Numbered from the stretch's first letter, positions 17,891-61,524 are shown. The stretch: 64,000 nt of DNA from Histomonas meleagridis 2922-C6/04-290x (GCA_020184695.1 JAANOX010000237.1:124001-188000), one strand, 5' to 3'. Numbers and translations are program-made. The notes: generated by a model not told the origin, from the sequence alone.

Positions 17891-18760
17891 TTATAAATAA
17901 ATATTTCTTATATCTTCTCGTTCAAGAAGCATTTGAACTATTTTTGTATGACCATTTAATGATGGTAAAATAAGTGCTGTTTCAAATAATTTAAATAATT
18001 TCCAAATATTATTTTGAAATATGAAATTATAAAAAGAAATTTTAAATAAAACAAATAAATATTTTAAGCATTAACATCAAACCCTTCTTGTTCAAGAAGT
18101 AATTTAACTATTTCTGTATGACCATTCCAAGATGCTTCTATAAGTGCTGTATTAAATATTTTAAATAATTTCCAAATATTATTTTGAAAAATCAAATTAT
18201 TAAAATAAATTTTAATTAAAATAAATAAATATCTTTAGCATTAATATCAATTTTTTCTTGTTTAAGAAGTAATTTAACGATTTCTGTATATACATTTTTT
18301 GAAGCATTTGTAAGAACTACAAATATTTTGAAAAAAATTTTTAAAATTTTTATGAAACAATAAAACACTTTAATAAAAATCCAATCAAATAAACAAATAA
18401 TCTTGCTTAAATCGATAGATATATATCTATTGTTAATTAAATAGTTAGAAAGTTCTACATTTCCTGAAAAACCCGAAATTTTCAAAAAATCAATTGGAAT
18501 ATGATTATCGAAGCAATGATAATATTTTTATTCATCTCCATTCCTCTTTCAATCAAAAATGAAAGAATATCAAAATTACAACAAAAAATACATTTTTCTC
18601 CTAATTTTTCTAAATCATTAACCATTTCGATTTTATTCTTAGATAAATATTTAAAGATATTATTTCGATGAAATTCAATTGCAATTTCATATGTACTTTC
18701 GAATGATGAATGATTTTGTTCACACAAATGAATAATTTCTTCATTTCCATCTACATTTTT
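17891..18760 (-). pseudogene. Degenerate DUF3447-ankyrin paralogue (locus B)
   Basis: Fragments EEIIHLCEQNHSSFESTYEIAIEFHRNDIF and GNVELSNYL match the paralogues. Ankyrin unit at 18061-18150 has an in-frame TAA (NA*N). 5' half is missing. Confidence 0.8.
17981..18230 (-). other. Two arrays of 4 x (17-nt interruption + 1 codon) in locus B
   Basis: 18151-18230 retains K-D-G-N; 17981-18060 retains K-H-G-E. Each array is exactly 80 nt. Confidence 0.9.
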
Positions 18761-26070: not shown

Positions 26071-28069
26071 TTATAAAATATTTTTATCATTAATATCAAT
26101 TCCTTCTTGTTCAAGAAGTAATTCAACTATTTCTGTATGACCTTTTTCAGATGCACAAATAAGTGCTGTTTTAAATAATTTGAACAATTTCCAAATATTA
26201 TTTTGAAACAAAAAATTATTAAAAAAAAATTTTTAAATAAAACAAATGAATATCTTTAGCATTAATATCAATTCCTTCTTGTTCAAGAAGTAATTCAACT
26301 ATTTCTGTATGACCATTTAAAGATGCATTAATAAGTGCTGTATTAAATAATTTGAATAATTTCCAAATATTATTTTGAAACAAAAAATTATTAAAATAAA
26401 TTTCATTTTTAGCATTAATATCAATTCCTTCTTTTTCAAGAAGTAATTTAACTATTTCTGTATGACAATTTAAAGATGCATTAATAAGTGCTGTTTCAAA
26501 TAATTTAAATAATTTCCAAATATTATTTAAAAATCCAAAATTATTAAAATAAATATTAAATAAAACAAATGAATATCTTTAGCATTAATATCAATTCCTT
26601 CTTTTTCAAGAAGTAATTTAACTATTTCTTTATGACAACTTAAAGATGCATTAATAAGTGCTGTTTCAAATAATTTAAATAATTTCCAAATATTATTTTG
26701 AAATATAAAATTATTAAAATAAATTCTAAATAAAACAAATAAATATTTTTAGCATTAATATCAATTCCTTTTTGTTCAAGAAGTAATTTAACTATTTCTG
26801 TATAACCATTATTAGATGCTTTCATAAGTGCTGTTTCAAATATTTTAAATAATTTCCAAATAGTATTTTGAAATATCAAATTATTAAAATAAATATTAAA
26901 TAAAACAAATGAATATCTTTAGCATTAATATCAATTCCTTTTTGTTTTAAAACGTATTCAACAAGTTCAATATTTCTTGATCCAGATGAAAATACCAAAA
27001 TATTATTCGGTATTGAATGATCTTTAAGTAAATATTCAACTGAAAAAATATTTCCAATCGTTGCTGCTTCGTTAATAATATCATCATTGATTTTCATTCC
27101 TTCTTTAACTAAAAATGAAAATATTTCATAGTTATGATATGAAATACAAAGCTTTCCTAATTTTTCTAAATTATAAATTTTTTTTAATTTATTCTCATAA
27201 GTATATTTAAAGATATCATTTCGATGGAATTGAATTGCTATTTCATATGCATCTTCAAATGATGAATGATTTTGTTCACATAAATGAATAATTTCTTCAT
27301 TTCCACCTGCAATTGCATATTTTCCTGTATTTTCTACTTTTGCATTGTTCAAGAGTAAATATTTGAAGCATTTAATAGATCCAAAGAATGCTGAATAATC
27401 AATTAATGAAACATTATCTTCATTAATGAATGGACATATTTCATAGAGTGATGGTTCTATATATTGATCAAAATCAAAATTTGTTTGTGATGATATTTCT
27501 TGAAGTTTTTCTGTTTCATCATTTCGAATTATTTTCGCAATTTCATTTGGATTATGTCCTTCTCTAATTAATTTCTGATGTAATTCCCAATCATTCTTTG
27601 AAAGCTCTTCATAATTTGGTAAGGCACTTACATATTCCCTTAAATGAATTGCTAATTCTTCTTTAGACATATAATGTGCAAAATAAGCACTCTGGTTGTT
27701 TTTTACAATGTTCGGTTCAAGAAAATTATGTTCAATCATAGCTTCAAGAAGATAATATGATTCATGTGTATGCTCATTATTAAGAAATTGACCAAATATA
27801 TCAAATATATTGGATTTGATTTTATTACTCTCTTCAAATGTTCTTATTTCTTTTATAATATTCAAAAATAAATCTATATTATTATTTTTAATTACAAAGG
27901 AATAATATATCATTTGAATAATAATTAAATCATAAGATAAAGGATGGATTTCATCAAATTTATTGATTATTAAACCTAAAGATCTAGAGAAATTTTCTTC
28001 ATTCAAACCAAAAATTGCTTGATTTATTGATAGAAGTGTTTCCCAGTCGCAACCTTCCTTTGGCCTCAT
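26071..28069 (-). CDS. DUF3447-ankyrin repeat protein (locus A), interrupted by 19 short non-GT/AG segments
   Basis: ORF 26876-28069 encodes a DUF3447-like region and ends just after GIDINAKD. Five more 90-nt ankyrin units follow (26745-26834, 26575-26664, 26405-26494, 26252-26341, 26080-26169). The 3' end at 26071 is uncertain. Confidence 0.8.
26170..26914 (-). other. Five arrays of 17-nt interruptions with single-codon spacers (locus A)
   Basis: 26835-26914 (4 elements; NDGE), 26665-26744 (4; RYGE), 26495-26574 (4; NWGE), 26342-26404 (3; EFGN), 26170-26251 (4, one 19 nt in homopolymer runs; KFGK). Confidence 0.92.
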
Positions 28070-47144: not shown

Positions 47145-47673
47145 ATTTTGTTAATGTTTTTTATTTGTTTCTAATTTTTGAGGGAACTGTGTTCGAATTT
47201 AAAGACAAGGTCTAAGTGAAGTGAAAAACTGACACTATAAACATAAATTTTCAGCATCTGTTCCATACAATTCTAAAAAAAATATAAACATAATAATATA
47301 CATTGTAGGTTAATCTTAAATATTATGTATCATGAAAATATATCAATTTTTTGAAAAAATATTTCATCATTATTTTTTTCACATTAATAATTAATTAAAG
47401 AAATAAAATGAATCATTAATTTTCAATAACGGAAATGGAATTAATTATCGAGACATTGCTAAAATAAAGAAATTCAGAAAAATATTATGAAAATTATTTG
47501 GTATATATCACAAGATTGGGCGTTAATTTAAAATATATATATATAGATCTATATTTAAAGATTCTCTCACATCATAACAAGAAACAATATGAATATAAAA
47601 TGCTTTAATTTAATATTTTTTCATAAATACTTTCACTTAATCAATAAATTTTACTTATTCATTAAAAGCAAAC

Positions 47674-50600
47674 TTACAAAAATCTTGCTCCAAAAAGAAA
47701 TGCTGGATTTGCTTCAGCAAATTTCGGTTTCGGTGCACCCCAACCACCAAATACTTGATGTGCTTGTTTTGTTTCTGATGCCAAAAGTTTTTCATCGTAT
47801 ATAATATCATTTTGCTTCTTAAGTAATTCCACAATATTTTTACAATTTTCATTACCTCCTTGATTTGAGTTTGCGAGCATAATTGCTGATTCACCGTTAT
47901 TATTTACTTCATTTATTTTTATATCTTTTTGTTGAAGAAGTAATTCTACGATTTCAAAACAACCATTTTGCGCAGCGCCCATTAAAGAATTCATAAATAA
48001 TTTTCATAAATTCCGAAGTTTTTATATAAATTTTAAAAAATTATAATAATTATTATTCTTATGATTTATATCGATTTCTTTATGATCGAGTAATAATTTA
48101 ACGATTTCCAAATGATTATTAAAACATGCTAACATAAAAGCAGTACCAAAATAATTAATTAAATTCCAAATTTTATCTATAAATTCCATTTTTTATTAAT
48201 AAACATATAATACTTATAATAAATACCATGAATGTCCAGATCAATTCCTTCATGTTCAAGTAATAGTTTAACTATATCTGTTCTTCCTTCTGAACAAGCA
48301 GTCATTAATGGTGTAAAATATATATATATTTAATTCCAAATATTGTTTTGATATAGAAATATTTTGAATCAATAATATAATGAAATAAATAAACAGATTT
48401 CACATTAACATTAACATCTTTTTTATCAAGAATTAACTTAAAGATTTCGAATTGATTCTTTTTAACTTCTTCAAAATTTGCTTTATTGTTAACAAATCAA
48501 TAAAATAAATCTTAACACGTGTAAATAAATTTGGCTTATTATTATCATTTCCTTGAGAATATTTCATATCGAAATGACATTGATCAGTTTTAGATGCACA
48601 ATGAGAATTCATAAAAATTATAAATAAATCAATTAACAAATAAAAAAACTCTAAATTATCAAAATTAATTCTAAACTCACAAAATGAACTTCGAAAAATT
48701 AAAGTAAACCAATTTGTTTTGATTTGGATTATAAAATGTATTATTATGTTTGTATAAAGACATTTTATGAAGTACAGTTTCAAATGATTGAATGAAATTC
48801 CAAATATTATTTCGAAATATTAAAAAGGCGGAACAAATCGTATTCAGAAGATTAACATCAATTCCTTTATGATCAAGAAGTAATTTAACAATTTCAACAA
48901 AACCTGCAATCGTTGCATACATTAAAGGTGAACCGAATGAATTAAATATATTTCACGAAATTTATCAATGAAATATTAAACTTAAGAAATGAATATCAAC
49001 AAAATTAACATCAATTTCTTTATGTTCAAGTAATAATTTAACAATATCAATGTAGTTATTACGTACAGCAAAAGTTAAAGCTGTTTCAAATAAATTAAAT
49101 TGTTTCCAAATAAAATTTAAAAACATAAAATTAATAAAATAAATTTTAAAACATATTATTAAATAGTTTTAGCATTAATATCAATATCTTTTTGTTCAAG
49201 AAGTAATTTAACAATATCAACACTGCCTTTCCATGTTGCAAAAATAAATGGGGTTTCAAAAAATGGAAACAATTTTTAAAAATATTTTAATATTATATTT
49301 ATTACATTTGTTAATATCAATTCCCTCAACATTAAGAAGAAGTTTCACAAGATCAACATTACCACTATTACATGCATAAAACAATGGCGTTAAAAAAACA
49401 ATAGACAAATTCCAAAGTTTGGAGTAAAACATTGAATTTATAAAACAAATATCGAACAAAAAAATGAAACATTTGCAATATTTATATCAATACCTTTACA
49501 TTCAAGAAGTAATTTGCATATTTTTATATAATTATTTTCAAATGCAAATGTTAATGCAGTTTTTCCTCTAGTATTTTGTTGTGAAATATCAATTCCTTTA
49601 TGTTGAAGAAGTAATTTAACTATTTTTGTATGACCATTTGAAGATGCTAAAATTAGCGCTGTATAAAATATTTGAAATAATTTCCAAATATTATTTTGAA
49701 ATATCAAATTATTATAATATATATTATTTTTAGCATTAACATCAATTCCTTCTTGTTCAAGAAGTAATTTAACTATATCTGTATTACCTTTATAAGATGC
49801 AAACATAATTGCTGTTTTAAATATTTTTAATAAATTCCAATAATTATTTTAAAATATTAAAATATTCAAATAAATAATATCTTTAGCATTAATATCAATT
49901 CCCTTTTGCTCAAGAAGCATTTTCACGTTTTCAATGTTATTTAAAGCACAAGCACAAAATAAAGGGGTTTTATAAAAGCACAAGAAACTCTACTAAATAT
50001 TCTCAACAAACATTAAAAAAACAAAAACAAATATCATAAATATTAACATTAATAGCTTTCCTCGATAAAACATATTTCACAAGTTCACTATTATTTGAAG
50101 AAACAGCATAAGCTATTGCATTATTTGGTAATGCTTTTCCTTCATAAAGATATCTTACAATGAATAAGTTACCACTTGCAAAAACTTCTTCAACGAATTG
50201 AGCATCATAAATATTAATTCCTTCATTTTCGATGAACAAAAAGATATCAAAGTTATCATATTGTATACATTTCGAACCCATATAATTTATTATTTTTATT
50301 TTCTTTTCTTCTTCACTTTCATTATTTCTCATTTGGTTCTGAGAAAATGTTATTGGATTTTGGAAGTTAAAATAACGCAGACATTTTCTTATAAACATAG
50401 TTCTTTCCTGATTATAATCGCATTTGAATAATTTATTTTCATATAGATAATAAAAGATATCATTTCGATGGAACTTAATTGCTGCTTTATAAGCGTTTCC
50501 AAATGTTACACCATTTTGTTCACATAAATGAATGATTTCAATGTTTCCACCTGCTACTGCATATTTACCAACATTTTCAATATAAGCACCATTAACTAAC

Positions 50601-51370
50601 AAATATTTAAAACATTTAATCGACCCATAAAATGCTGCATATTGGATTAATGTAACAGGATGTTCATCACAACTAAAACATTTGGTGAATTTCTCATAAA
50701 TTGATACTGGTAATGGCTCATCAATATCAATTTTATTGTTTGATATTATTTCTTGAAGTTGTTCAGCATCATCATTACGTATAGCTTTTGTGACTTCAGA
50801 AGGATTTCCTTCGTTCATGTTCTTTTTATGTTCTTCAAAATTACTTCCTTTTTGTTGACGAATGATTTCAATAGCTTTCTGTTCCCCAAAGGAGGGTTGT
50901 GCTTTTTGAGCTTGATTTTCAATTGATGAAATTTGTTCTTTTGTTAATAAATGAACAAAGTATATCTTGTTTTCTGGGTGATCAATAAATTGATCAGGTC
51001 TTATTAAATTATTTTCAACTAATTTAACTAATATAAAATTGGACTCTCTAATACCCACTGAAAGTAAATAACTTTTAAATAGTGAAAATATTTGTGGACT
51101 TTCTTTGAGAATTTCTTCTTCCTTTTTTTCAATAAATTGTAAATATTGTATATAGATATTTATATCTTTACGCTGTGATAGATATGATGAATAAATATTT
51201 CTTATTAGAACCAGATTAAATGAAATTGGAAAATTAGTATCAAATAAATCCATGGTTAATTGAACAGTCAATTCAATGTTTTCTTGATTTAAATCAAAAA
51301 GTAAATTACTAATATCTTGAAGATATTTGATTTCTTCTTTGGGATTTCTTGTTGTCATTTTGTTGTCCAT
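47674..51370 (-). CDS. DUF3447-ankyrin repeat protein (locus C), one gene interrupted by 42 short segments; 993 aa after removal
   Basis: 3697 nt minus 41x17 and 1x18 nt leaves 2982 nt = 994 codons, with no internal stop in my manual translation. This joins ORFs 50003-51370, 49438-49806, 49256-49459, 48677-48922, 48433-48783 and 47674-47994. Confidence 0.85.
47992..50032 (-). other. Twelve arrays plus one singleton of 17-nt interruptions (locus C)
   Basis: 49969-50032 (NSRK), 49816-49878 (INGK), 49663-49725 (NDGY), 49391-49470 (DNGL), 49255-49300 (KYKE), 49085-49164 (KYGE), 48932-48994 (NREG), 48779-48841 (TNGE), 48613-48709 (5 elements), 48494-48510 (single), 48315-48394 (YSGF), 48145-48224 (YGGG), 47992-48054 (NKGM). 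Confidence 0.9.
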
Positions 51371-51649
51371 TGCCTGAAAAAAACGTTAAAAAAGTGCCTT
51401 GGCATGGATTGCATAGCTTCTATCAGAGTAGTGTAAACGAAATTAATTCATATTTTTCTCTGAATGGAAATTAATAAATTCATTTTAGATATATAAAATA
51501 TCTCTTTATATATGTAGAGATTAATATTATCATTATCTAATATTGCAATGCCTTAATTAATATTTCGGAAATGAGGGAAAATCAATTCATTATGAAATTT
51601 TCTCAAATGAATATAGTTTCTCATGAAAATATCATTTTCAATTTGAATT

Positions 51650-52490
51650 TTGAAAATATTAAAAAAATCAACAAAATCAATTGATGAATTTGATAAAAAA
51701 TATGATTGGGAATTTCATAAACAATTAATTAAAAAAGGAGTAAATCCTAATGAAATTACAATAATAATTCGAAATTATGAAATAGAAAAACTTCAAGAAA
51801 TATCATCACAAAATGATTTTAAATTTTTGGATCAATTATATGTTTTAGATATTTAATTATGAATGGTGTTAAAGTCGGCAAATATTCATTTGCAGGTGGA
51901 AATGAAGTAATAATTCATTTATGTGAAAATAATAATGGATCATTTTATGAAGCAGCAATTGAATTTCATTGAAATGATATCTTTAAACACCTTTATGAAA
52001 ATAAAATTGTTAAAACGATAAATTTAGATTACTTATATAAGTAATGTATTGTCAATAATTCATTTAATTGTGTAGGAAGGATTGAATTTAGATTCTTTCA
52101 TATATGAATTATCATTGACTGGAATTTATATCTAATAAAATGTTTTCTTGAAAAATATAAACTACTAAATGATATTTATTTCATGAGCAAGTCCAGGAAA
52201 TATTGAACTTGTTGAATATTTTCTTAAATTTGAACAAACTGATATCAATGTTAGAAAAGTTTCTATAAAAAATTGGGAATTTGTTGATATGTCATTATAT
52301 TTAATATGAGTATTTGGCTATTTTTTATGTTTTTTGATATTTATTTGAAAAATTTTATACCCTTATATAATATTTGGAAATAATTTATATTATTTAATAC
52401 ATCAGTTATTAAAGCATTTAAAAATGCTCAAATAGAAATAGTTAAATTGCTTCTTGAACAAAAAGGAATTAATGTTAGCTGGAGGGTCAA
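51650..52490 (+). pseudogene. Degenerate DUF3447-ankyrin paralogue (locus E)
   Basis: WEFHKQLIKKGVNPNEI, GGNEVIIHLCE, AAIEFH*NDIF and GNIELVEYFL fragments with stops and frameshifts; one ankyrin unit starts at 52399. Confidence 0.8.
52259..52398 (+). other. Array of 7 x (17-nt interruption + 1 codon)
   Basis: 140 nt = 7 x 20. Retained codons GGA TAT GGC GAT TAT GGA AAT precede ACA (Thr). Confidence 0.85.
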
Positions 52491-52918
52491 AAAACCAACA
52501 TTTGTATAAATTTTAAAAATGCGATAAAATAGATATCATTGAGATCAGTAAATTTTTCAGAGGTACTAAAACTCAAAATCATGCAATATTTTTTCAACGA
52601 TAATTATATGTTAATAATGGCATCGGTAGGAGATTACAAAAATATTTTTGTTATGAAATTTTGACTGTTAAATCTTTCCAAATTCGATATGATTTCGACC
52701 ATACTTTTTTGGGAATTTTGTGATATTTCCTATATAGTAATATTGTATGTTAGATATGTTTATTTTCTAAATAATTATCTTGTATTATTTTTATTAAAAT
52801 TTAGAAAGTGTGGAACTCAATTTAAAAAAAAAAATTAATTGAAAAATTGTTATTCGAAAACTTAACTTTGGTTTATATGATGAGATAAAAAGATTTTATA
52901 TTTGTTGACTATAAGTTT

Positions 52919-54915
52919 TTACTGTTTATTGTTTTTTTCTTTATCATTGAATAATTTAACTATTTCTTCGTAACCTTTAATTGTTGCAATCATGAGTGGA
53001 GTTAATAATAATTTGCATGAATATCAAATATCAGTTTGAAACATAAAATTGATTAAATTAACACTAAATATAATAAATTGATAGTATAAGTATGAATTAC
53101 TATTCCCTCTTGTTCAAGTAATAGTTTAACAATTTCAGTTTTTCCACATTCACATGCAACTAAAAGAGCTGTTTGAAGAAAAATGAATAAAATCCAAATA
53201 TCATTTTGAAAAGTCATTTTTTACAATTAAATATTATATACTTTAAATATATATCTTTAGCATTAATATCAATTCCTTTTTGTTTAAGGAGCAATTTTAT
53301 AATGTCAATATGACCATATCTAGTTGCCAGCATTAAAGCTGTCCATAATAATTTATAAAAATTCCAAAACTTATTTTTAAGCATTAAATTATTCTATTAA
53401 ATATTGAACAAAATTTTAAAATATCTTTGTTATTAATATCAATGTCCTTTTGCTCAAGAAGTAATTTGACAACATCAGTACATCCATTAAGTGATGCATT
53501 CATTAAAGCTGTTTTAAATTCTTTGAATAATTTCCATTAACAATTTTAAAATATAAAGTTATTAAAATATATTTTGTTCAAAACGAATAAACATCGCTAA
53601 TATTTATATCAATTCCTTCTTGTTCAAGAAGCAATTTTACAATTTCTATATGACCATTTTTTGTAGCAATTATAAGTGCAGTTTGAAATAATATAAAGAA
53701 TTTCCAAATATTACTTAAAAACTTCACATGAGTAAAATTAAAACTTTTTTCATTTATATTAATACACTTTAGATCGATGACATATTTAACGAGTTCAACA
53801 TTTCCTGACAATGAAGAAAAAATTAAAATATCTTTCGGAACAGGTTTCTTATTAAGGAAATATTTAACAAGAAATATATTTCCAATATTAGCTGCTAAAT
53901 TAATAAATGATTCTTCAATATCCATACCTTCTTTTTCCAAAAAATAAAGAATTTGATAATTGTTACATTTAATACAAATTTTTCCCAGTTTGTTTATATT
54001 GTCAATTTTAGACATTTTATTCTCGTAAAGATAATGAAAGATATCATTTCGATGAAACAAAATTGCAGTTTCAATAGTTCCTTCGAAAGATAAATGATAT
54101 TGTTCACAAAGATGAAACATTTCTATGTTACCACCTGCAACAGCAAATATTCCTGAATTATAACTTGCTCCGTTTAGTAACAAAAATTTAAAACATTTAA
54201 TTGATCCAAAAAATGCTGCATAATCAATTAACGAAACTTTTTCTTGATTAATAAATGAACATCTTTCATAAATTGAAGGACAAATTATTTGATTAAAATT
54301 AAAATCATTTTGTGATGATATTTCTTGAAGTTTTTCTATTTCGTCATTTCGAATTATTTTTGCTATTTCATTCGGATTAACTCCTTCTTTAATTAATTGC
54401 TTATGAAGTTCCCAATTATTCTTTGATAGTTCTTTTATATTATCAAAGAAATCTCTACTATGGTAGTATCTAGCTAATCGAAAATCTTCAAATTCTTCAT
54501 TACTTAGAAAATGTGAAAAATAAAAAGATTTATGTTTTTTGCTTTTTATAACTTGAGATGTGATTAATTTATATTCATACAACTTTTCAAGAAGAAAATT
54601 AGATTCTTGAGAATCAGAGCAAAGAAGAATTGTTGTAAATATATGAATTAGCTTGAAATCATTTTTATTGATTTTTTCTTTTTCTTCAATTTCCTGGAGA
54701 AAATGAATACAAATATCGAATTCATTCACGTTTGAACTAAAGCTTAAAAGAAATAATTGACTTAGAACAGTATTGAATGAATATACTAAATTATCATCAA
54801 ATAAATTCATAATCGATTCAATTGATGAATTAAAATTATCTTTATTTAAGCCAAAAACAATTTGTTCCATCAGTAGTAAGATATCATCAGTGATATTTTG
54901 AAATGACGCCTTCAT
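52919..54915 (-). CDS. DUF3447-ankyrin repeat protein (locus D), interrupted by 19 short segments; 557 aa after removal
   Basis: 1997 nt minus 19x17 = 1674 nt = 558 codons. Ankyrin units at 53593-53682, 53423-53512, 53253-53342, 53083-53172, then a terminal unit ending at TAA 52919-52921. Confidence 0.85.
53003..53742 (-). other. Five arrays of 17-nt interruptions (locus D)
   Basis: 53683-53742 (60 nt, 3 elements, EGQ), 53513-53592 (KYGK), 53343-53422 (NNGW), 53173-53252 (NDGQ), 53003-53082 (SYDL). Confidence 0.9.
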
Positions 54916-55965: not shown

Positions 55966-58900
55966 TTGAGCGGCTTTGGTTTGCAACTTTATATTAAGAG
56001 TGCATGCAAGGAAATTTGTTTGGAAACAATTTATATTTTTGCCACTTTTTGTCCAATAAGAAAAAATAAGCGCAAAAAACAACAAATGATTACTTCATCA
56101 ACTAAATTCGATATTACTAAATACATGCATTCAGGTGCATCACAAGATGGAACACTATGTGCTAGTATGGTTGTTTTTTCGCAACTAAATCCAAGAGTAA
56201 ATCAATACCAACAAATCGGACAATTACCTCTTGTAATTAGTCGGAAATCCGCAAACTTAATGATTCTTGTCCTTGGTCCACAGAAGAAAATTCTGACCTA
56301 TGTACAAGTAACACAATCAATTAATTGGATTATTCAATCAAGTGTTTATTGCACATTTATTGATCAAAATAATGTCAGGTGTTTGGCTAGATTTAATACT
56401 GCTGAGGATGCTCAGTTTTTCACAATGATTGCTCTTTCCAAAAAAATCAACATCGGAATTAACAGTTATTGTATTGATCAAGGAAAAAACGATTTACAAA
56501 TTTGTAGTGATAATGAAAATATTTTAGTAAAAGTTAGAGTTTATGATCTAACATTACAAGCAGTTCATGAGGCAATCGACAAAATTGATAACTGTTATAT
56601 TGAAGATTCTATAACATTTCCCAATACAAAAATGAATGGGGTCTATGTAGCCCAAATTTCTCAGTCAATATTTGCTATAATGGAAATAGTTGGAAAGCAA
56701 ATGAAGGAAAAAAAGAAAAGCGGACTCTTTGGCTTCTTCGGTGTTGAAGAAGAAAATGATAATAGCGAAAGTGAAAGTGATTTATTCGGCTTTAATAGAA
56801 AAGAAAGAAATTCATCAGAAAATAGTTCAGAAGAAGAGGAAAATAACTTATTTGGATTTCATAAAAAAGTATCCAGAAAAATAGAGGAAGAAGAGGAAGA
56901 AGAAAATAGTGAAAGCGAAAGTAGTTTTAGAGGTAAACAGAAAAGAGTATATAGAAAAATAGAGGAAGAAGAAGAAAATAGTGAAAGCGAAAGTAGTTTA
57001 AGAGGTAAACAGAAAAGAGTATATCAAAGAATGGAAGAAGAGGAAGAAGAAGAAAACAGCCAAAGCGAAAACAATTTAAGAAGTAATCAGAAAAGAGTAT
57101 ATAGAAAAATAGAGGAAGAAGAGGAAGAAGAAGAAAATCTTGAAGAGGAAAATGAAAGAAGTAAAGAAGAAAATATGGAGGAAATCGAAGAGGAAAATGA
57201 GAATAAAGAGGAAGAAAATGAAGACGAAAATGATGATAAAGAAGATGATATTGAAGAAGATAAAGGTGAACATAGTGATGTTATAGAACATCAAGACAAC
57301 GAAGAAGAAATTGAAGACAAAAAAGAAGAAAATAAAGAAATAGAAAAAGAGAAAGAAGAAACTTCAGAAGAAGATAAAGAAGAAGTTGAAGAAGAATATA
57401 TGGAAGATAAAAATGAAATAAAAGAAAAAGAAACCAAAGAAGAAATTATCGAAGAAACGGAAGAGGAAGAAGTTAAAGAAGAAGAAAAGGAAGGTAAAAA
57501 AGATAAAGAAGAAGACAAAGAAGAAATTAAGGAAGAAATCCTAGAAAGAGTTAAAAAAGAGGAAGTTAAGAAAGATGAAAAAGAAAATATAAAAGAAGAA
57601 ACACAAGAAGAGGAAGATAAAGAAGAAACTAAAGAAAAAATTAAAGAAGATAAAGAAGGGGATGTTAAAGAGGAAGAAACTCAAGAAGAAGAAATTAAGG
57701 AAGATAAAGATGAATCTTCAAAAGTAGAAACTGAGGGAAATGAAGAAGAAATCAAAGAACATAAAGAAAGAAATCCAGAAGAAGTTAAAGAGGAAGAAAT
57801 TAAAGATAAAGAAGAAATATCAGAGGGTGAAATTAAAGAAGATAAAGAAAGAACTACAGAAGAAGAAATTGAAGAAGAAGAAACTAAAGAAGAGGAAACT
57901 AAAGAAAATAACAAAAAAATTAAAGAAAAAACTATAGAAGAAGTTAATGAAGATAAAAAAGAAAATAAAGAAGGAACACCAGAAAAAATTGAAGAAGAAG
58001 TTAAAGAAGAGGAAACTAAAGAAGATAAAGAAGAAACTAAAGAAGAAGTTAAAGAAGAAGAAGAAATTAAAGAAGAGGAAACTATCGAAGACAAAAAAGA
58101 AGAAACTAAAGAAGGAACACCAGAAGAAGTTGAAGAAGAAGTTAAAGAAGAGGAAACTAAAGAAGATAAAGAAGAAACTAAAGAAGAAGTTAAAGAAGAA
58201 GAAGAAACTAAAGAAGAAGTTAAAGAAGAAGAAGAAATTAAAGAAGAGGAAACTAAAGAAAGAACACCAGAAGAAGTGAAAGAAGAAGAGGAAACTAAAG
58301 AAGTTAAAGAAGAAGTTAAAGAAGAAGAAGAAACTAAAGAAGATAAAGAAGAAGTCAAAGAAGAAGAAATTAGAGAAGAGGAAACTAAAGAAGATGAAGA
58401 AGAAACTAACGAAGAAATTAAAGAAGAAGAAGAAACTAAAGAAGATAAAGAAGAAGAAGAAACTAAAGAAGAGGTTAAAGAAGAAGAAAAAGAAGAAACT
58501 AAAGAAGAATTTAAAGAAGAAGAAGAAATTAAAGAAGATAAAGAAGAGGTTAAAGAAGAAGAAACTAAAGAAGAAGTTAAAGAAGAAGAAGAAACTAAAG
58601 AAGATAAAGAAGAAGAAGAAATTAAAGAAGAGGAAACTAAAGAAAGAACACCAGAAGAAGTGAAAGAAGAAGAGGAAACTAAAGAAGATAAAGAAAATGA
58701 AATTGAAGAAGAAGAAATTAAAGAAGATAAAGAAGAGGTTAAAGAAGAAGAAACTAAAGAAGAAGTTAAAGAAGAAGAAGAAACTAAAGAAGTTAAAGAA
58801 GAAGAAGAAATTAAAGAAGAGGAAACTAAAGAAAGAACACCAGAAGAAGTGAAAGAAGAAGAGGAAACTAAAGAAGTTAAAGAAGAAGTTAAAGAAGAAG

Positions 58901-61524
58901 AAGAAATTAAAGAAGATAAAGAAGAAGTCAAAGAAGAAGAAATTAGAGAAGAGGAAACTAAAGAAGATGAAGAAGAAACTAAAGAAGAAGTTAAAGAAGA
59001 AGAAGAAATTAAAGAAGAGGAAACTAAAGAAAGAACACCAGAAGAAGTGAAAGAAGAAGAGGAAACTAAAGAAGATAAAGAAGAAGTCAAAGAAGAAGAA
59101 ATTAGAGAAAAGGAAACTAAAGAAGAGGTTAAAGAAGAAGAAGTTAAAGAAGAAGAAGAAACTAAAGAAGAATTTAAAGAAGAAGAAGAAGTTAAAGAAG
59201 AAGATAAAGAAGAGGAAACTAAAGAAAGAACACCAGAAGAAGTGAAAGAAGAAGAAGAAATTAAAGAAGAAACTAAAGAAAAAGCACAAAAAGAAGTGAA
59301 AGAAGAAGAAACTAAAGAAAAAACACCAGAAGAAATGAAAGAAGAAGAAGAAATTAAAGAAGATGAAACCAAAGAAAATAAAGAAAGAACGCCAGAAAAA
59401 GAAGAAGAAGTCAAAGAAGAAATTAAAGAAAATAAAGAAAAAGAAATTAAAGAAGAAGAAATTGAAGAAGAAGATAAAGAAGAGGAAACTAAAGAAAGAA
59501 CACCAGAAGAAGAAACTCGGGAAGAAATTATCAAAGAAGAGGAAACTGGAGAAAAGGAAGTTAAAGAAGATAAAGAAGCAAGAAAAGAAGAAGAAAATAA
59601 GGAAGAGGAAAATAAAGAAGAAATTAAAGAAAATAAAGAAAGAACACAAGAAGAAGTTGAAGAAGAAGAAACTAAAGAAGAAAGTAAAAATAAAGAAGAT
59701 GAAGTCAAGGAAGATAGAGAAGAAGAAAGAACTCCAGAAGAAGATGAAGAAGTTAAGGAAAATATAAAAGAAGAAGAAACTCTAGAAGAAAATAAAAATA
59801 AACAAGAAGAAATAAAAGAAAACGAAATTAAAAATAAATCTGATGAAGAAGAAGAAAAATCACCACCAAAAGAAAGTTCTGATGAAAAAACCAAAGATCA
59901 ATCAGAATCGTCTAAAGAAAACTCCGAAGCCGAAGCAAAAGGTAAATCTGAGCGGTCTAAAGAAAACTCCGAAGCCAATGAAGATAAATCTGAATCATCT
60001 AAAGAAAGTTCTGATGAAGAAACCAAAGATCAATCAGAATCGTCTAAAGAAAACTCCGAAGCCGAAGCAAAAGGTAAATCTGAATCGTCTAAAGAAAGTT
60101 CTGATGAAGAAACCAAAGATCAATCAGAATCGTCTAAAGAAAACTCCGAAGCCAATAAAGATAAATCTGAATCATCTAAAGAAAGTTCTGATGAAGAAAC
60201 CAAATACAAATCAGAATCGTCTAAAGAAAACTCCGAAGCCGAAGCAAAAGGTAAATCTGAATCATCCAACGGAAGTTCTGATGATAAATTCATCCAAATT
60301 CTGAGTGATGATGAAATTGGCACAAAAAAAACAACAAAACGTCGGAAGCCCGCTCCAAAGCATGACGACACCTCCGATGACTTCAGCGATCTCTTTGCCA
60401 AGCCAAAGAAGAAGAAGCAGCGAATATCACTTTTCGACGCAGATTTGACAGATTCGTCAACAGATGCATTTGATTTTGACTTCACCAAACCTGCTAAGAC
60501 TAAGTCTAAGAAACGTATCACGTTATTTGATGATATAATACCCTCGACAAAGCCCAAAAAGTCCAAAAAGAAATCGAAATCAAAATCCCGAAAGTCACTT
60601 TTTGATAGTATTGACGATAGCGCACCACCAGTCAAATCCACTGAATTACCTAAAGAAGAATTGAAAGCCGAAATCGGTTCTTCCGTAGAAAAAGTTCATA
60701 AGGATCTTGGCACTTTTGCCTATGTTGATAAAGCACAAAAGTTTACATCTGCTTCTGAACTTAGGCAATCAATGCGCTCACGATTTGCGCAACTTGAATC
60801 CCTTATCAAGTCCATTACTATTCAAGAGTGTAAAACTACACAACTTGATTTACCAAATATTGTACTCAAAGAAAGTATTCATAAATTAGTAAATGACATT
60901 AAATCCAAAGATGCGCGACTTAAACAAATGCAAATTCTTATCGATTTCCTTGACGAAACTACAACATCGACATTTGAAAAAGATGAAATTCTAAAAGAGC
61001 AGAAAAAGCGTCGAATGGAAATCAAAACAGAAGAAACGCGAACAGAATCCGCAATTTCGGAACTTGTCGAAGTGCAAAAAGTTGTAAATTCGCTCGAGCA
61101 AGAACTTTCTGATATTTCCATATCATTGCAACAATCGGAGAATGAACTTCGCGCGAAACACGAAGCGGAAATGTACCGAGAAGCGTCTGAAAGCATCGAA
61201 GAGCAAAAGCCGATCGAGCAGAAAATGATCGAAGCGAAGAATCGGAAAGTTAACATCGAAATAAAACTGATGCCATTACTTGACGAAAACAAGAAAATGA
61301 AAGAAAACGTCGACACGAAATCGCTTAAAGAAATTGAAGAACTGAAAAGTAACGCACCGAAAATGCTGAAGGAAGTCGTGCTCGAGATGAAGGAGGGACT
61401 GGAGGCGATGCTGGAAAGCGCGTTCAACCCATTGAGGGAATACGACGGAGATATGGTGGCAACGGCGGTGAAAAACGCGTTGAAGAAACAAGGAATGTTA
61501 TGTATGCAAAAGAGGAAAGTGTAA
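55966..61524 (+). CDS. Giant Glu/Lys-rich repeat protein with FKBP15-like N-terminal PH/WH1-type domain and C-terminal coiled coil
   Basis: 1852-aa ORF. N-terminal YCTFIDQNNVRCLARFNTAEDAQFF resembles FKBP15 YSTFYDDQRQNWSIMFESEKAAVEF (from memory). About 1000 aa of E/K repeats. True start probably MITSS. Confidence 0.8.
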   Translation: MSGFGLQLYIKSACKEICLETIYIFATFCPIRKNKRKKQQMITSSTKFDITKYMHSGASQDGTLCASMVVFSQLNPRVNQYQQIGQLPLVISRKSANLMILVLGPQKKILTYVQVTQSINWIIQSSVYCTFIDQNNVRCLARFNTAEDAQFFTMIALSKKINIGINSYCIDQGKNDLQICSDNENILVKVRVYDLTLQAVHEAIDKIDNCYIEDSITFPNTKMNGVYVAQISQSIFAIMEIVGKQMKEKKKSGLFGFFGVEEENDNSESESDLFGFNRKERNSSENSSEEEENNLFGFHKKVSRKIEEEEEEENSESESSFRGKQKRVYRKIEEEEENSESESSLRGKQKRVYQRMEEEEEEENSQSENNLRSNQKRVYRKIEEEEEEEENLEEENERSKEENMEEIEEENENKEEENEDENDDKEDDIEEDKGEHSDVIEHQDNEEEIEDKKEENKEIEKEKEETSEEDKEEVEEEYMEDKNEIKEKETKEEIIEETEEEEVKEEEKEGKKDKEEDKEEIKEEILERVKKEEVKKDEKENIKEETQEEEDKEETKEKIKEDKEGDVKEEETQEEEIKEDKDESSKVETEGNEEEIKEHKERNPEEVKEEEIKDKEEISEGEIKEDKERTTEEEIEEEETKEEETKENNKKIKEKTIEEVNEDKKENKEGTPEKIEEEVKEEETKEDKEETKEEVKEEEEIKEEETIEDKKEETKEGTPEEVEEEVKEEETKEDKEETKEEVKEEEETKEEVKEEEEIKEEETKERTPEEVKEEEETKEVKEEVKEEEETKEDKEEVKEEEIREEETKEDEEETNEEIKEEEETKEDKEEEETKEEVKEEEKEETKEEFKEEEEIKEDKEEVKEEETKEEVKEEEETKEDKEEEEIKEEETKERTPEEVKEEEETKEDKENEIEEEEIKEDKEEVKEEETKEEVKEEEETKEVKEEEEIKEEETKERTPEEVKEEEETKEVKEEVKEEEEIKEDKEEVKEEEIREEETKEDEEETKEEVKEEEEIKEEETKERTPEEVKEEEETKEDKEEVKEEEIREKETKEEVKEEEVKEEEETKEEFKEEEEVKEEDKEEETKERTPEEVKEEEEIKEETKEKAQKEVKEEETKEKTPEEMKEEEEIKEDETKENKERTPEKEEEVKEEIKENKEKEIKEEEIEEEDKEEETKERTPEEETREEIIKEEETGEKEVKEDKEARKEEENKEEENKEEIKENKERTQEEVEEEETKEESKNKEDEVKEDREEERTPEEDEEVKENIKEEETLEENKNKQEEIKENEIKNKSDEEEEKSPPKESSDEKTKDQSESSKENSEAEAKGKSERSKENSEANEDKSESSKESSDEETKDQSESSKENSEAEAKGKSESSKESSDEETKDQSESSKENSEANKDKSESSKESSDEETKYKSESSKENSEAEAKGKSESSNGSSDDKFIQILSDDEIGTKKTTKRRKPAPKHDDTSDDFSDLFAKPKKKKQRISLFDADLTDSSTDAFDFDFTKPAKTKSKKRITLFDDIIPSTKPKKSKKKSKSKSRKSLFDSIDDSAPPVKSTELPKEELKAEIGSSVEKVHKDLGTFAYVDKAQKFTSASELRQSMRSRFAQLESLIKSITIQECKTTQLDLPNIVLKESIHKLVNDIKSKDARLKQMQILIDFLDETTTSTFEKDEILKEQKKRRMEIKTEETRTESAISELVEVQKVVNSLEQELSDISISLQQSENELRAKHEAEMYREASESIEEQKPIEQKMIEAKNRKVNIEIKLMPLLDENKKMKENVDTKSLKEIEELKSNAPKMLKEVVLEMKEGLEAMLESAFNPLREYDGDMVATAVKNALKKQGMLCMQKRKV
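56875..59870 (+). repeat. Purine-rich coding repeat tract (GAA/AAA-based EEETKEEVK and ERTPEE modules)
   Basis: Shuffled modules such as GAAGAAGAAACTAAAGAAGAAGTTAAA and GAAAGAACACCAGAAGAAGTGAAA; plus strand overwhelmingly A/G. Confidence 0.95.
59872..60270 (+). repeat. Nine-unit 45/45/42-nt coding minisatellite (order A B C A B A C A B)
   Basis: A=ESSDEETKDQSESSK, B=ENSEAEAKGKSESSK, C=ENSEANEDKSESSK; 7x45 + 2x42 = 399 nt. Confidence 0.9.

What the first reader, a model, noticed from the sequence alone, without database searches (positions are those of the whole stretch)
48932..53592. Simple ribosomal frameshifting or read-through cannot explain the arrays; phase-0 placement hints at translational bypass
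Net extra lengths of 34, 51 and 68 nt cover all three frames. In-frame 63-nt arrays contain stops (49816-49878 TAA; 48932-48994 TGA TAA TGA; 47992-48054 TAA, TGA). In 53513-53592 and 49969-50032 the incoming frame stops before the outgoing frame's stop, so one frameshift cannot pass. The elements parse between codons, whereas spliceosomal introns occur in all phases, and 3-nt exons are hard for exon definition. Competing hypotheses: (a) repeated 17-nt ribosome hops, which would differ from T4 gene 60 because take-off and landing codons do not match; (b) a non-spliceosomal or highly derived splicing activity that measures 17 nt; (c) DNA-level elimination. Phase assignment is partly ambiguous in T-runs.
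Basis: inference. Interest (0 to 1): 0.85.

Follow-up and report, generated by a model that had tools for sequence, protein, structure and literature searches.

The report
17-nt introns between single codons
Ankyrin genes of this trichomonad-like protist are interrupted by runs of exactly 17-base AU-rich inserts separated by single codons; RNA assemblies show the inserts are cut out of the RNA, so this is an undescribed form of splicing rather than ribosome hopping.

Summary
Ankyrin repeats on the minus strand are spaced 102 + 17n nt apart (n = 4, 3, 2 or 0). The extra DNA parses as 17-nt AU-rich elements between whole codons. Removing 42 elements from gene C (51370-47674) gives one 993-aa ORF, and removing 19 from gene D gives a 557-aa ORF.

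The lean towards translational bypass is not supported. Contigs from three RNA runs of the same organism lack the elements exactly and keep the single codons. One junction reads IDINISD-KYG-KTALMNA. DNA contigs of the same organism keep every element. One RNA contig has lost only one element of an array, so elements come out one at a time. Frameshifting, read-through, bypass and DNA elimination are disfavoured.

The element consensus is R-UUU-A ... A-UUU. None of 84 ends in AG, and no RNA structure is predicted. The host is a parabasalid (Rpt5 83% identical to Tritrichomonas foetus). The same repeat family in a Histomonas contig has no elements, while two gut-metagenome contigs do.

The length sits at the known floor for spliceosomal introns (15-17 nt), so a derived minimal spliceosomal intron is the best guess. 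The machinery is not shown.

First readers of this scan noted the same system on many other pieces of this genome. None had been followed up.

The parts
50033..51370 (-). Gene C, uninterrupted N-terminal exon (446 codons; DUF3447 plus first ankyrin repeats)
   Evidence: ORF. Pfam DUF3447 and Ank. Homologues in Tritrichomonas, Histomonas and Trichomonas. RNA contigs X3 rec12 and X5 rec19 stop aligning exactly at 50032.
49969..50032 (-). Array of 3 elements (18+17+17 nt) with single codons AAT and AGT, followed by two exon codons TAT AAA
   Evidence: My parse. The edge at 50032 matches the end of the RNA contig alignments. The first element has one extra T in a T-run.
49819..49875 (-). Array of 3 x 17 nt, loop D-I-N-G-K
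49666..49722 (-). Array of 3 x 17 nt, loop N-N-D-G-Y
49394..49470 (-). Array of 4 x 17 nt, loop N-D-N-G-L
   Evidence: RNA contigs X3 rec11 and X5 rec18 stop aligning at 49470, the array edge.
49258..49303 (-). Two elements (34 nt extra); exact placement ambiguous
   Evidence: Extra length 34. Two near-equal parses (49267-49303 or 49258-49294); the span given covers both.
49088..49164 (-). Array of 4 x 17 nt, loop T-K-Y-G-E
48935..48994 (-). Array of 3 x 17 nt, loop D-N-R-E-G (two codons between elements 2 and 3)
48782..48838 (-). Array of 3 x 17 nt, loop N-T-N-G-E
48613..48709 (-). Five-element array outside an ankyrin loop (single codons GAA, AGA, AGA, TTG)
   Evidence: RNA contigs of three runs (X3 rec10, X5 rec17, X6 rec24) stop aligning at 48612, the array edge.
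48494..48510 (-). Singleton element ATTTATTTTATTGATTT, phase 0, boundaries cannot be shifted
   Evidence: table 4: 17 nt left out in RNA run X6 (contig depth 101) and 0 of 1707 in DNA run X1. It is retained in the listed contigs of X3 and X5.
48318..48394 (-). Array of 4 x 17 nt, loop S-Y-S-G-F
48148..48224 (-). Array of 4 x 17 nt, loop G-Y-G-G-G
47995..48051 (-). Array of 3 x 17 nt, loop N-N-K-G-M
47674..47994 (-). Last exon of gene C up to the TAA stop
   Evidence: After removal of the 42 elements the ORF ends at residue 993.
52259..52395 (+). Seven-module array (7 x 17 nt plus single codons) in a plus-strand ankyrin gene, loop G-Y-G-D-Y-G-N
   Evidence: RNA contigs X3 rec16 and X6 rec29 stop aligning at 52259.
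53686..53742 (-). Gene D, array of 3 x 17 nt
53516..53592 (-). Gene D, array of 4 x 17 nt; the RNA keeps only AAA TAT GGA (K-Y-G)
   Evidence: table 5c: X3 joint 53515->53593 with TCCATATTT between (77-9 = 68). DNA contig X1 rec8 spans it ungapped.
53346..53422 (-). Gene D, array of 4 x 17 nt; the RNA keeps AAT AAT GGA (N-N-G)
   Evidence: table 5c: X3 joint 53346->53422 with CCATTAT between (75-7 = 68). Parse.
53176..53252 (-). Gene D, array of 4 x 17 nt, seen partly processed
   Evidence: X5 contig rec23 lacks 17 nt at 53235-53251 but keeps the other three elements. DNA run X1 shows 0 of 2605.
53006..53082 (-). Gene D, array of 4 x 17 nt, removed in RNA
   Evidence: table 8: X5 rec23 and X6 rec30 jump 53005->53082 with 8 letters between (76-8 = 68) and 0 mismatches in the flanks. 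DNA contig X1 rec7 is ungapped.

Best explanation
The arrays are runs of very short intervening sequences. Each is 17 nt, about 92% A+U, with consensus R-UUU-A at the 5' end and A-UUU at the 3' end. They are removed from the transcript itself, one element at a time. What remains is the single codons between them, which together encode the ankyrin beta-hairpin loop.

Shown here:
- The elements are present in the DNA.
- They are precisely absent from RNA assemblies.
- The single codons are retained in the RNA.
- A partly processed intermediate exists.
- Length is strictly quantised.

Inferred: the remover is most likely the spliceosome working at its minimal intron size. The fixed length would come from the geometry of the active site, and the splice-site consensus has drifted from GU...AG to RU...UU. 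Tiny introns are recognised by intron definition. Each removal fuses a 3-nt exon to its neighbour, so the 3-nt exons never need exon definition.

Odds: RNA-level excision about 0.9. Given that, spliceosomal about 0.65 against a dedicated non-spliceosomal cut-and-ligate activity about 0.3.
For: RNA against DNA:
- A 17-nt deletion at 48494 is seen only in RNA run X6, and one at 53235 only in RNA run X5.
- Joints 53515->53593 (+9 letters), 53346->53422 (+7) and 53005->53082 (+8) each remove a net 68 nt, which is 4 x 17.
- The first of these joints reads AAA TAT GGA on the sense strand.
- The flanks of X5 rec23 have 0 mismatches, so this is the same locus and not a paralogue.
- DNA contigs X1 rec7 and rec8 span the arrays ungapped, at the same depth (about 530) as element-free pieces.
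- RNA contig alignments end exactly at the predicted array edges 48612, 49470, 50032 and 52259.
- Intergenic 51470-51669 is near zero in X3 and X5 (57.6 in X6) against 831 in DNA.

Quantisation: repeat spacing is 102 + 17n in 21 of 24 intervals.

Decoding: removing 42 elements gives a 993-aa ORF and removing 19 gives a 557-aa ORF.

Consensus: position 1 is A or G, positions 2-4 are TTT, position 14 is A, and positions 15-17 are TTT. In metagenome relatives the 5' end is mostly GT, GC or GA.

Size: 17 nt lies inside the known floor for spliceosomal introns. Heterotrich ciliates have 15-16 nt (PMC9505925) and mikrocytids 16-17 nt (PMC10245619).

That would pair with A(+1) and wobble with G(+1).
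Against: - None of 84 elements ends in AG and only 18% start with GT.
- The parabasalid splice motifs known from Trichomonas (5' GTAYGT, 3' ACTAACACACAG; PMC12316389) are absent.
- No lariat or branch evidence could be obtained.
- No snRNA was examined.
- The RNA evidence comes from assembled contigs, not raw reads. The run kinds are the tool's guess ('RNA?'), and contigs show presence but not proportions.
- The exact position of the internal single codons is fixed by the 17-nt rule plus the final RNA product, not by reads of every intermediate.
- One element appears to be 18 nt (50015-50032).
Confidence: 0.6

Rival explanations
1. The elements are removed from RNA by a non-spliceosomal activity. 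This would be an endonuclease-plus-ligase or other protein 'ruler' that recognises the AUUU-type ends 17 nt apart, cuts both sides and reseals, in the manner of tRNA or XBP1/HAC1 splicing.
For: Same RNA evidence as the main explanation. Ends are not GT-AG. Length is strictly fixed. Both ends carry a similar motif, ATTT at positions 1-4 and 14-17. The elements are confined to one gene family, while other genes in the window are long uninterrupted ORFs.
Against: No bulge-helix-bulge or hairpin potential was found. The mean MFE z-score of the arrays is -0.19, and single elements with 6-nt flanks fold at about -1.3 kcal/mol. No pairing covariation was detected. Spliceosomal introns of 15-17 nt with equally narrow size ranges already exist. 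G or A at +1, and GT/GC starts in relatives, look like a decayed 5' splice site.
Confidence: 0.25
2. Programmed translational bypass: the elements stay in the mRNA and ribosomes hop 17 nt repeatedly.
For: Phase-0 placement. Many elements carry in-frame stops. Frameshifting and read-through are excluded.
Against: RNA contigs lack the elements. Take-off and landing codons do not match. No hairpin is predicted. Four consecutive hops per repeat and 42 per protein would be prohibitively inefficient by what is known of T4 gene 60 (my knowledge).
Confidence: 0.02
3. DNA-level elimination: a somatic or extrachromosomal DNA copy without the elements is the transcribed template.
For: Precise, scarless removal resembles ciliate IES excision.
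Against: DNA-run contigs keep the elements, and their depth equals that of flanking single-copy pieces. The DNA run shows 0 depth for the 17-nt deletions. An RNA contig with one of four elements removed indicates stepwise processing of RNA. Ends are not TA-bounded. Parabasalids are not known to have nuclear dimorphism (my knowledge).
Confidence: 0.03
4. The loci are decaying pseudogenes, and the 17-nt periodicity is only inherited from a duplicated ancestral repeat with no processing system.
For: The elements are homologous by slot among repeats. One copy has an in-frame TAA in an exon (repeat at 18150). A plus-strand gene has an in-frame TGA at 51970.
Against: Element sequences have diverged to about 66-69% identity without changing length. 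Removing them gives 993-aa and 557-aa ORFs. The loci are transcribed and the processed RNA is observed.
Confidence: 0.03

Closest known systems
Minimal-length spliceosomal introns (heterotrich ciliates such as Stentor, 15-16 nt; mikrocytids, 16-17 nt; chlorarachniophyte nucleomorph, 18-21 nt)
   Same: Removed from RNA. AU-rich. Extremely narrow length range at the lower limit of splicing, and 17 nt falls inside that range (PMC9505925; PMC10245619).
   Different: Those introns are reported as GU...AG (stated for Stentor) with a fixed branch A, and they are scattered singly through many genes. Here none of 84 ends in AG and most start with AU. They stand in tandem, separated by single codons, and in this window occur only in ankyrin genes.
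Parabasalid spliceosomal introns (Trichomonas vaginalis types A and B)
   Same: Same group of organisms. Type B introns are short (23-25 nt) and T-rich (PMC12316389).
   Different: Trichomonas has only about 63 introns. All are GT/AG with a 12-nt 3' motif ACTAACACACAG. None is 17 nt and none is in tandem. That motif is absent from the elements.
Euglenid nonconventional introns
   Same: Nuclear mRNA introns without GT-AG borders, removed at the RNA level (PMC12501133 abstract).
   Different: By my knowledge they vary in length and depend on pairing between intron ends. Here the length is fixed and no pairing signal is found.
Programmed translational bypass (phage T4 gene 60, yeast mitochondrial byps)
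   Same: A short non-coding gap placed between codons, often carrying stops.
   Different: In bypass the gap stays in the mRNA and the take-off and landing codons match. Here the gap is absent from RNA and the codons differ.
Animal and plant microexons, recursive splicing
   Same: Exons as short as 3 nt exist, and stepwise removal can regenerate splice contexts (papers listed; my knowledge).
   Different: Those microexons are rare, flanked by long canonical introns and helped by enhancers. Here single-codon exons are the rule: three per ankyrin loop, flanked by 17-nt introns.

Membership tests
Programmed translational bypass | The coding gap is retained in the mature mRNA | tested here: not met
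   RNA-run contigs lack the elements at 48494, 53235, 53006-53081, 53346-53422 and 53516-53592.
Programmed translational bypass | Matching take-off and landing codons | tested here: not met
   Codons on either side differ, for example GAT|E|AAA and TAT|E|GGA.
Programmed translational bypass | Stimulatory hairpin at the take-off site | tested here: not met
   Single elements with 6-nt flanks fold at about -1.3 kcal/mol, z about -0.2.
U2-type spliceosomal intron | Removed from the transcript | tested here: met
U2-type spliceosomal intron | GT (or GC) at the 5' end and AG at the 3' end | tested here: not met
   5' dinucleotides among 84 elements: AT 51, GT 15, AA 12, TT 4, GC 2. 3' dinucleotides: TT 62, AG 0.
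U2-type spliceosomal intron | Branch-point adenosine and lariat formation | not testable with these tools
   A is frequent at positions 9, 11 and 14, but that is uninformative in AU-rich sequence. No lariat data were available.
Parabasalid intron consensus | 5' GTAYGT and 3' ACTAACACACAG motifs | tested here: not met
   Motifs as described in PMC12316389. They are absent from the element list.
Minimal (15-17 nt) spliceosomal introns | Length confined to one or two values at the size floor | tested here: met
   Extras of 17n in 21 of 24 repeat intervals. 41 of 42 elements in gene C are 17 nt and one is 18 nt.
U12-type AT-AC intron | 5' ATATCC and branch site TCCTTAAC | tested here: not met
   The elements start ATTT(A/C), and no TCCTTAAC is present in the list. 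The motif definition is from my knowledge.
tRNA-type (bulge-helix-bulge) or IRE1-type intron | Defined RNA structure presenting both cut sites | tested here: not met
   No excess folding energy and no pairing covariation. These are weak tests in AU-only sequence.
Ciliate-type internal eliminated sequence | Absent from the DNA that is transcribed; TA-bounded | tested here: not met
   DNA contigs keep the elements at full depth, and a partly processed RNA exists. Ends are R...T, not TA...TA.

The most novel reading that the evidence does not exclude
The 17-nt elements are not spliceosomal. They would be excised by a dedicated, previously unknown RNA cut-and-rejoin machine that measures 17 nt between AUUU-type ends. 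This would allow ankyrin loops to be written, and perhaps varied, codon by codon through optional inclusion of single-codon exons or duplication of 20-nt modules.
Probability: 0.25. Interest if true: 0.97.

Novelty: new variant of a known kind. Interest (0 to 1): 0.86.

Why it matters
If this holds, it is the densest known use of single-codon exons, with three per ankyrin loop and dozens per gene. It is also a class of nuclear mRNA introns that share a fixed 17-nt length but lack GT-AG ends.

It bears on three open questions:
- How short an intron and an exon can be and still be processed.
- How the 3' splice site is chosen when no AG is present, for example by distance alone.
- How introns are gained. 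A Histomonas contig carries the same 34-aa repeat family without any elements, so these look like lineage-specific gains.

There is a practical consequence too. Gene finders will miss or truncate these genes. The 993-aa gene C appears as six ORF fragments, so the ankyrin repertoire of this organism and its relatives is probably badly under-annotated.

Tried and rejected
- A free decoder allowing element lengths of 12-23 nt and any phase was too permissive. In AT-rich DNA it read through stop-free elements or used odd lengths to dodge stops. It recovered 17 nt and phase 0 cleanly only in the best-conserved locus A. I relied instead on anchor distances and a slot-restricted parse.
- A 17-nt, phase-0 decoder with a high opening probability over-predicted triplets of elements inside the uninterrupted N-terminal ORFs. 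Those calls were discarded.
- A search for pairing covariation within elements or with their flanks found only slot-specific homology.
- Folding of arrays and single elements gave no signal.
- Rfam and tRNA scans of the window found nothing.
- The metagenome scan with the N-terminal domain returned one unrelated-looking locus without these repeats.
- Searching the two-repeat exon 49471-49662 for identical proteins from RNA assemblies found none.
- Literature searches for 17-nt introns, single-codon exons and parabasalid non-canonical introns found no description.
- I did not submit a predicted spliced protein to the database tools.


Full report
**What is there**

The window is AT-rich (21-37% GC) and gene-dense. 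It has long uninterrupted ORFs of up to 2032 aa, uses the standard code and mostly TAA stops.

The N-terminal part of the gene at 51370-50033 (minus strand) carries DUF3447 plus ankyrin repeats. Its relatives are parabasalid proteins from Histomonas, Tritrichomonas and Trichomonas. A proteasome ATPase in the window is 83% identical to Tritrichomonas foetus, 76% to Trichomonas vaginalis and 68% to Histomonas. The host is therefore a parabasalid.

**Check of the observation**

I anchored every ankyrin repeat on its conserved 'TAL...IVKLLLEQ' exon with tblastn. Distances between successive repeats are:
- 102 nt for the one uninterrupted repeat;
- otherwise 102 + 68 (13 times), + 51 (6 times) or + 34 (once).

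Three exceptions are 52, 70 and 48 nt. The first two fit one or two extra T in a T-run; the third is at the first, atypical repeat of gene D.

All 13 four-element arrays parse identically: codon 30, then a 17-nt element, codon 31, element, codon 32, element, codon 33 (nearly always GGA, Gly), element, codon 34. The resulting loops are ordinary ankyrin loops such as DKYGK, DNNGW, DNDGE and NRYGE.

Deleting the 42 parsed elements of gene C (41 of 17 nt, one of 18 nt) gives a single 993-aa ORF ending at 47674. Deleting 19 elements gives a 557-aa ORF for gene D.

**The decisive test**

Public runs of the same organism exist. I laid contigs of three RNA runs and one DNA run on 47670-53660.

The RNA contigs lack the elements:
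- A 17-nt deletion at 48494 is present only in RNA run X6.
- A 17-nt deletion at 53235 is present only in RNA run X5.
- Three joints each remove a net 68 nt: 53515->53593 with nine letters between, 53346->53422 with seven, and 53005->53082 with eight.
- The nine retained letters read AAA TAT GGA on the sense strand, so the product is IDINISD-KYG-KTALMNA. This is exactly the predicted set of single codons.

The flanks of contig X5 rec23 match the window with no mismatch, so it comes from this locus and not from a paralogue.

RNA contig alignments end precisely at the predicted array edges 48612, 49470, 50032 and 52259.

The DNA run behaves differently. Its contigs cross the same arrays ungapped, at the same depth as element-free pieces. 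Its depth for the two 17-nt deletions is 0.

One RNA contig has lost only the first of four elements of array 53176-53252, while the next array downstream in the same contig is fully processed. Elements are therefore removed individually, and at the RNA level.

Caveats: these are assembled contigs, and the run kinds are the tool's guess. However, intergenic 51470-51669 is close to zero in two of the three RNA runs and at full depth in the DNA run.

**What this does to the interpretation**

The lean towards translational bypass does not:
- the gap is not in the RNA;
- take-off and landing codons differ;
- there is no hairpin.

DNA elimination is also disfavoured.

**Anatomy of the elements**

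Among 84 distinct elements in the window:
- Position 1 is A (about 75%) or G (about 20%).
- Positions 2-4 are TTT.
- Position 5 is A or C.
- Position 14 is A.
- Positions 15-17 are TTT.
- None ends in AG and only 18% begin with GT.

The recurrent motif ATTTGGAAAT is simply the end of one element, the Gly codon GGA, and the start of the next.

There is no folding signal. The arrays have a mean z-score of -0.19, and single elements with 6-nt flanks fold at about -1.3 kcal/mol. There is no pairing covariation either.

Elements in the same slot of different repeats are 66-69% identical, against about 55% for different slots. The single codons between them are less conserved, at about 49%. The elements have diverged in sequence while keeping their length.

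Three-element arrays usually just lack the first slot.

Elements also occur outside loops, as a five-element array at 48613-48709 and a singleton at 48494-48510. A seven-module array sits on the plus strand at 52259-52395.

**Distribution**

In the window the elements are confined to five ankyrin loci. Other genes are uninterrupted.

Two gut-metagenome contigs encoding paralogous or related proteins show the same 170-nt spacing and 17-nt elements. There the elements mostly start GT, GC or GA.

A Histomonas meleagridis contig carries the same 34-aa repeat family at exactly 102-nt spacing, so it has no elements. This looks like lineage-specific gain.

**Mechanism**

Seventeen nucleotides lies inside the known size floor of spliceosomal introns: 15-16 nt in Stentor and 16-17 nt in mikrocytids. 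In those cases the length range is equally narrow. That is what one expects if the geometry of the catalytic centre acts as the ruler.

Three observations fit a decayed 5' splice site:
- R at +1;
- GT and GC starts in relatives;

Intron definition of tiny introns, removed one by one, would also remove the exon-definition problem for 3-nt exons.

Against a spliceosome: AG is completely absent, and so are the strong parabasalid motifs known from Trichomonas.

I therefore put RNA-level excision at about 0.9. Given that, I put a derived spliceosomal mechanism at about 0.65 and a dedicated non-spliceosomal cut-and-ligate activity at about 0.3. No step of the chemistry has been shown.

**Why phase 0**

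This is inference. Splicing does not care about phase, so the uniform phase more likely reflects origin. Elements appear or are absent scarlessly at codon boundaries, and 20-nt modules (element plus codon) can duplicate, as in the seven-module array.

Modularity also keeps any skipping of a single-codon exon in frame.

**Novelty**

The ninth search only retrieved the Stentor comparison paper.

First readers of this scan flagged the same system on many other pieces of this genome. None had been followed up.

I class it as a new variant of a known kind, namely minimal introns. There is a real chance, about one in four, that it is a new kind of RNA excision.

Noticed in passing
window 50015-50032 and 26190-26234: Length exceptions. 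One element parses as 18 nt, with an extra T in a T-run. One array in locus A is 2 nt too long, also in T-runs. These could be tolerated 18-nt variants, inactivating mutations or homopolymer assembly errors.
   Followed up: partly
window 51970-51972 (plus strand): In-frame TGA at the conserved Arg of the 'FHRNDIF' motif (EFH*NDIF) in the plus-strand DUF3447/ankyrin gene. It is probably a CGA-to-TGA change. The gene is still covered by RNA contigs.
   Followed up: no
window 18061-18072 (minus strand): In-frame TAA inside an ankyrin exon (DVNA*N) of locus B. This is a likely pseudogene copy that still keeps four exact 17-nt elements.
   Followed up: no
window 55966-61524: A region of about 5.5 kb with extreme purine skew (GC skew up to 0.59, AT skew up to 0.71) that is open as an 1852-aa ORF. 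It looks like a low-complexity repeat gene.
   Followed up: no
L007:1440-1660 (ENA metagenome contig): Another DUF3447/ankyrin gene from a different AT-rich organism. T-rich interruptions of roughly 25-80 nt sit at the same loop position, with no obvious AG end. They are not 17-nt units.
   Followed up: no
L005:6511-7513 (Histomonas meleagridis GCA_020184695.1): The same 34-aa ankyrin repeat family (…IVKLLLEQKDININ…) at exact 102-nt spacing, with no elements.
   Followed up: yes
window 48494-48510: The singleton element is removed in the RNA contig of run X6 but retained in the listed contigs of runs X3 and X5. Removal may be inefficient or regulated.
   Followed up: partly
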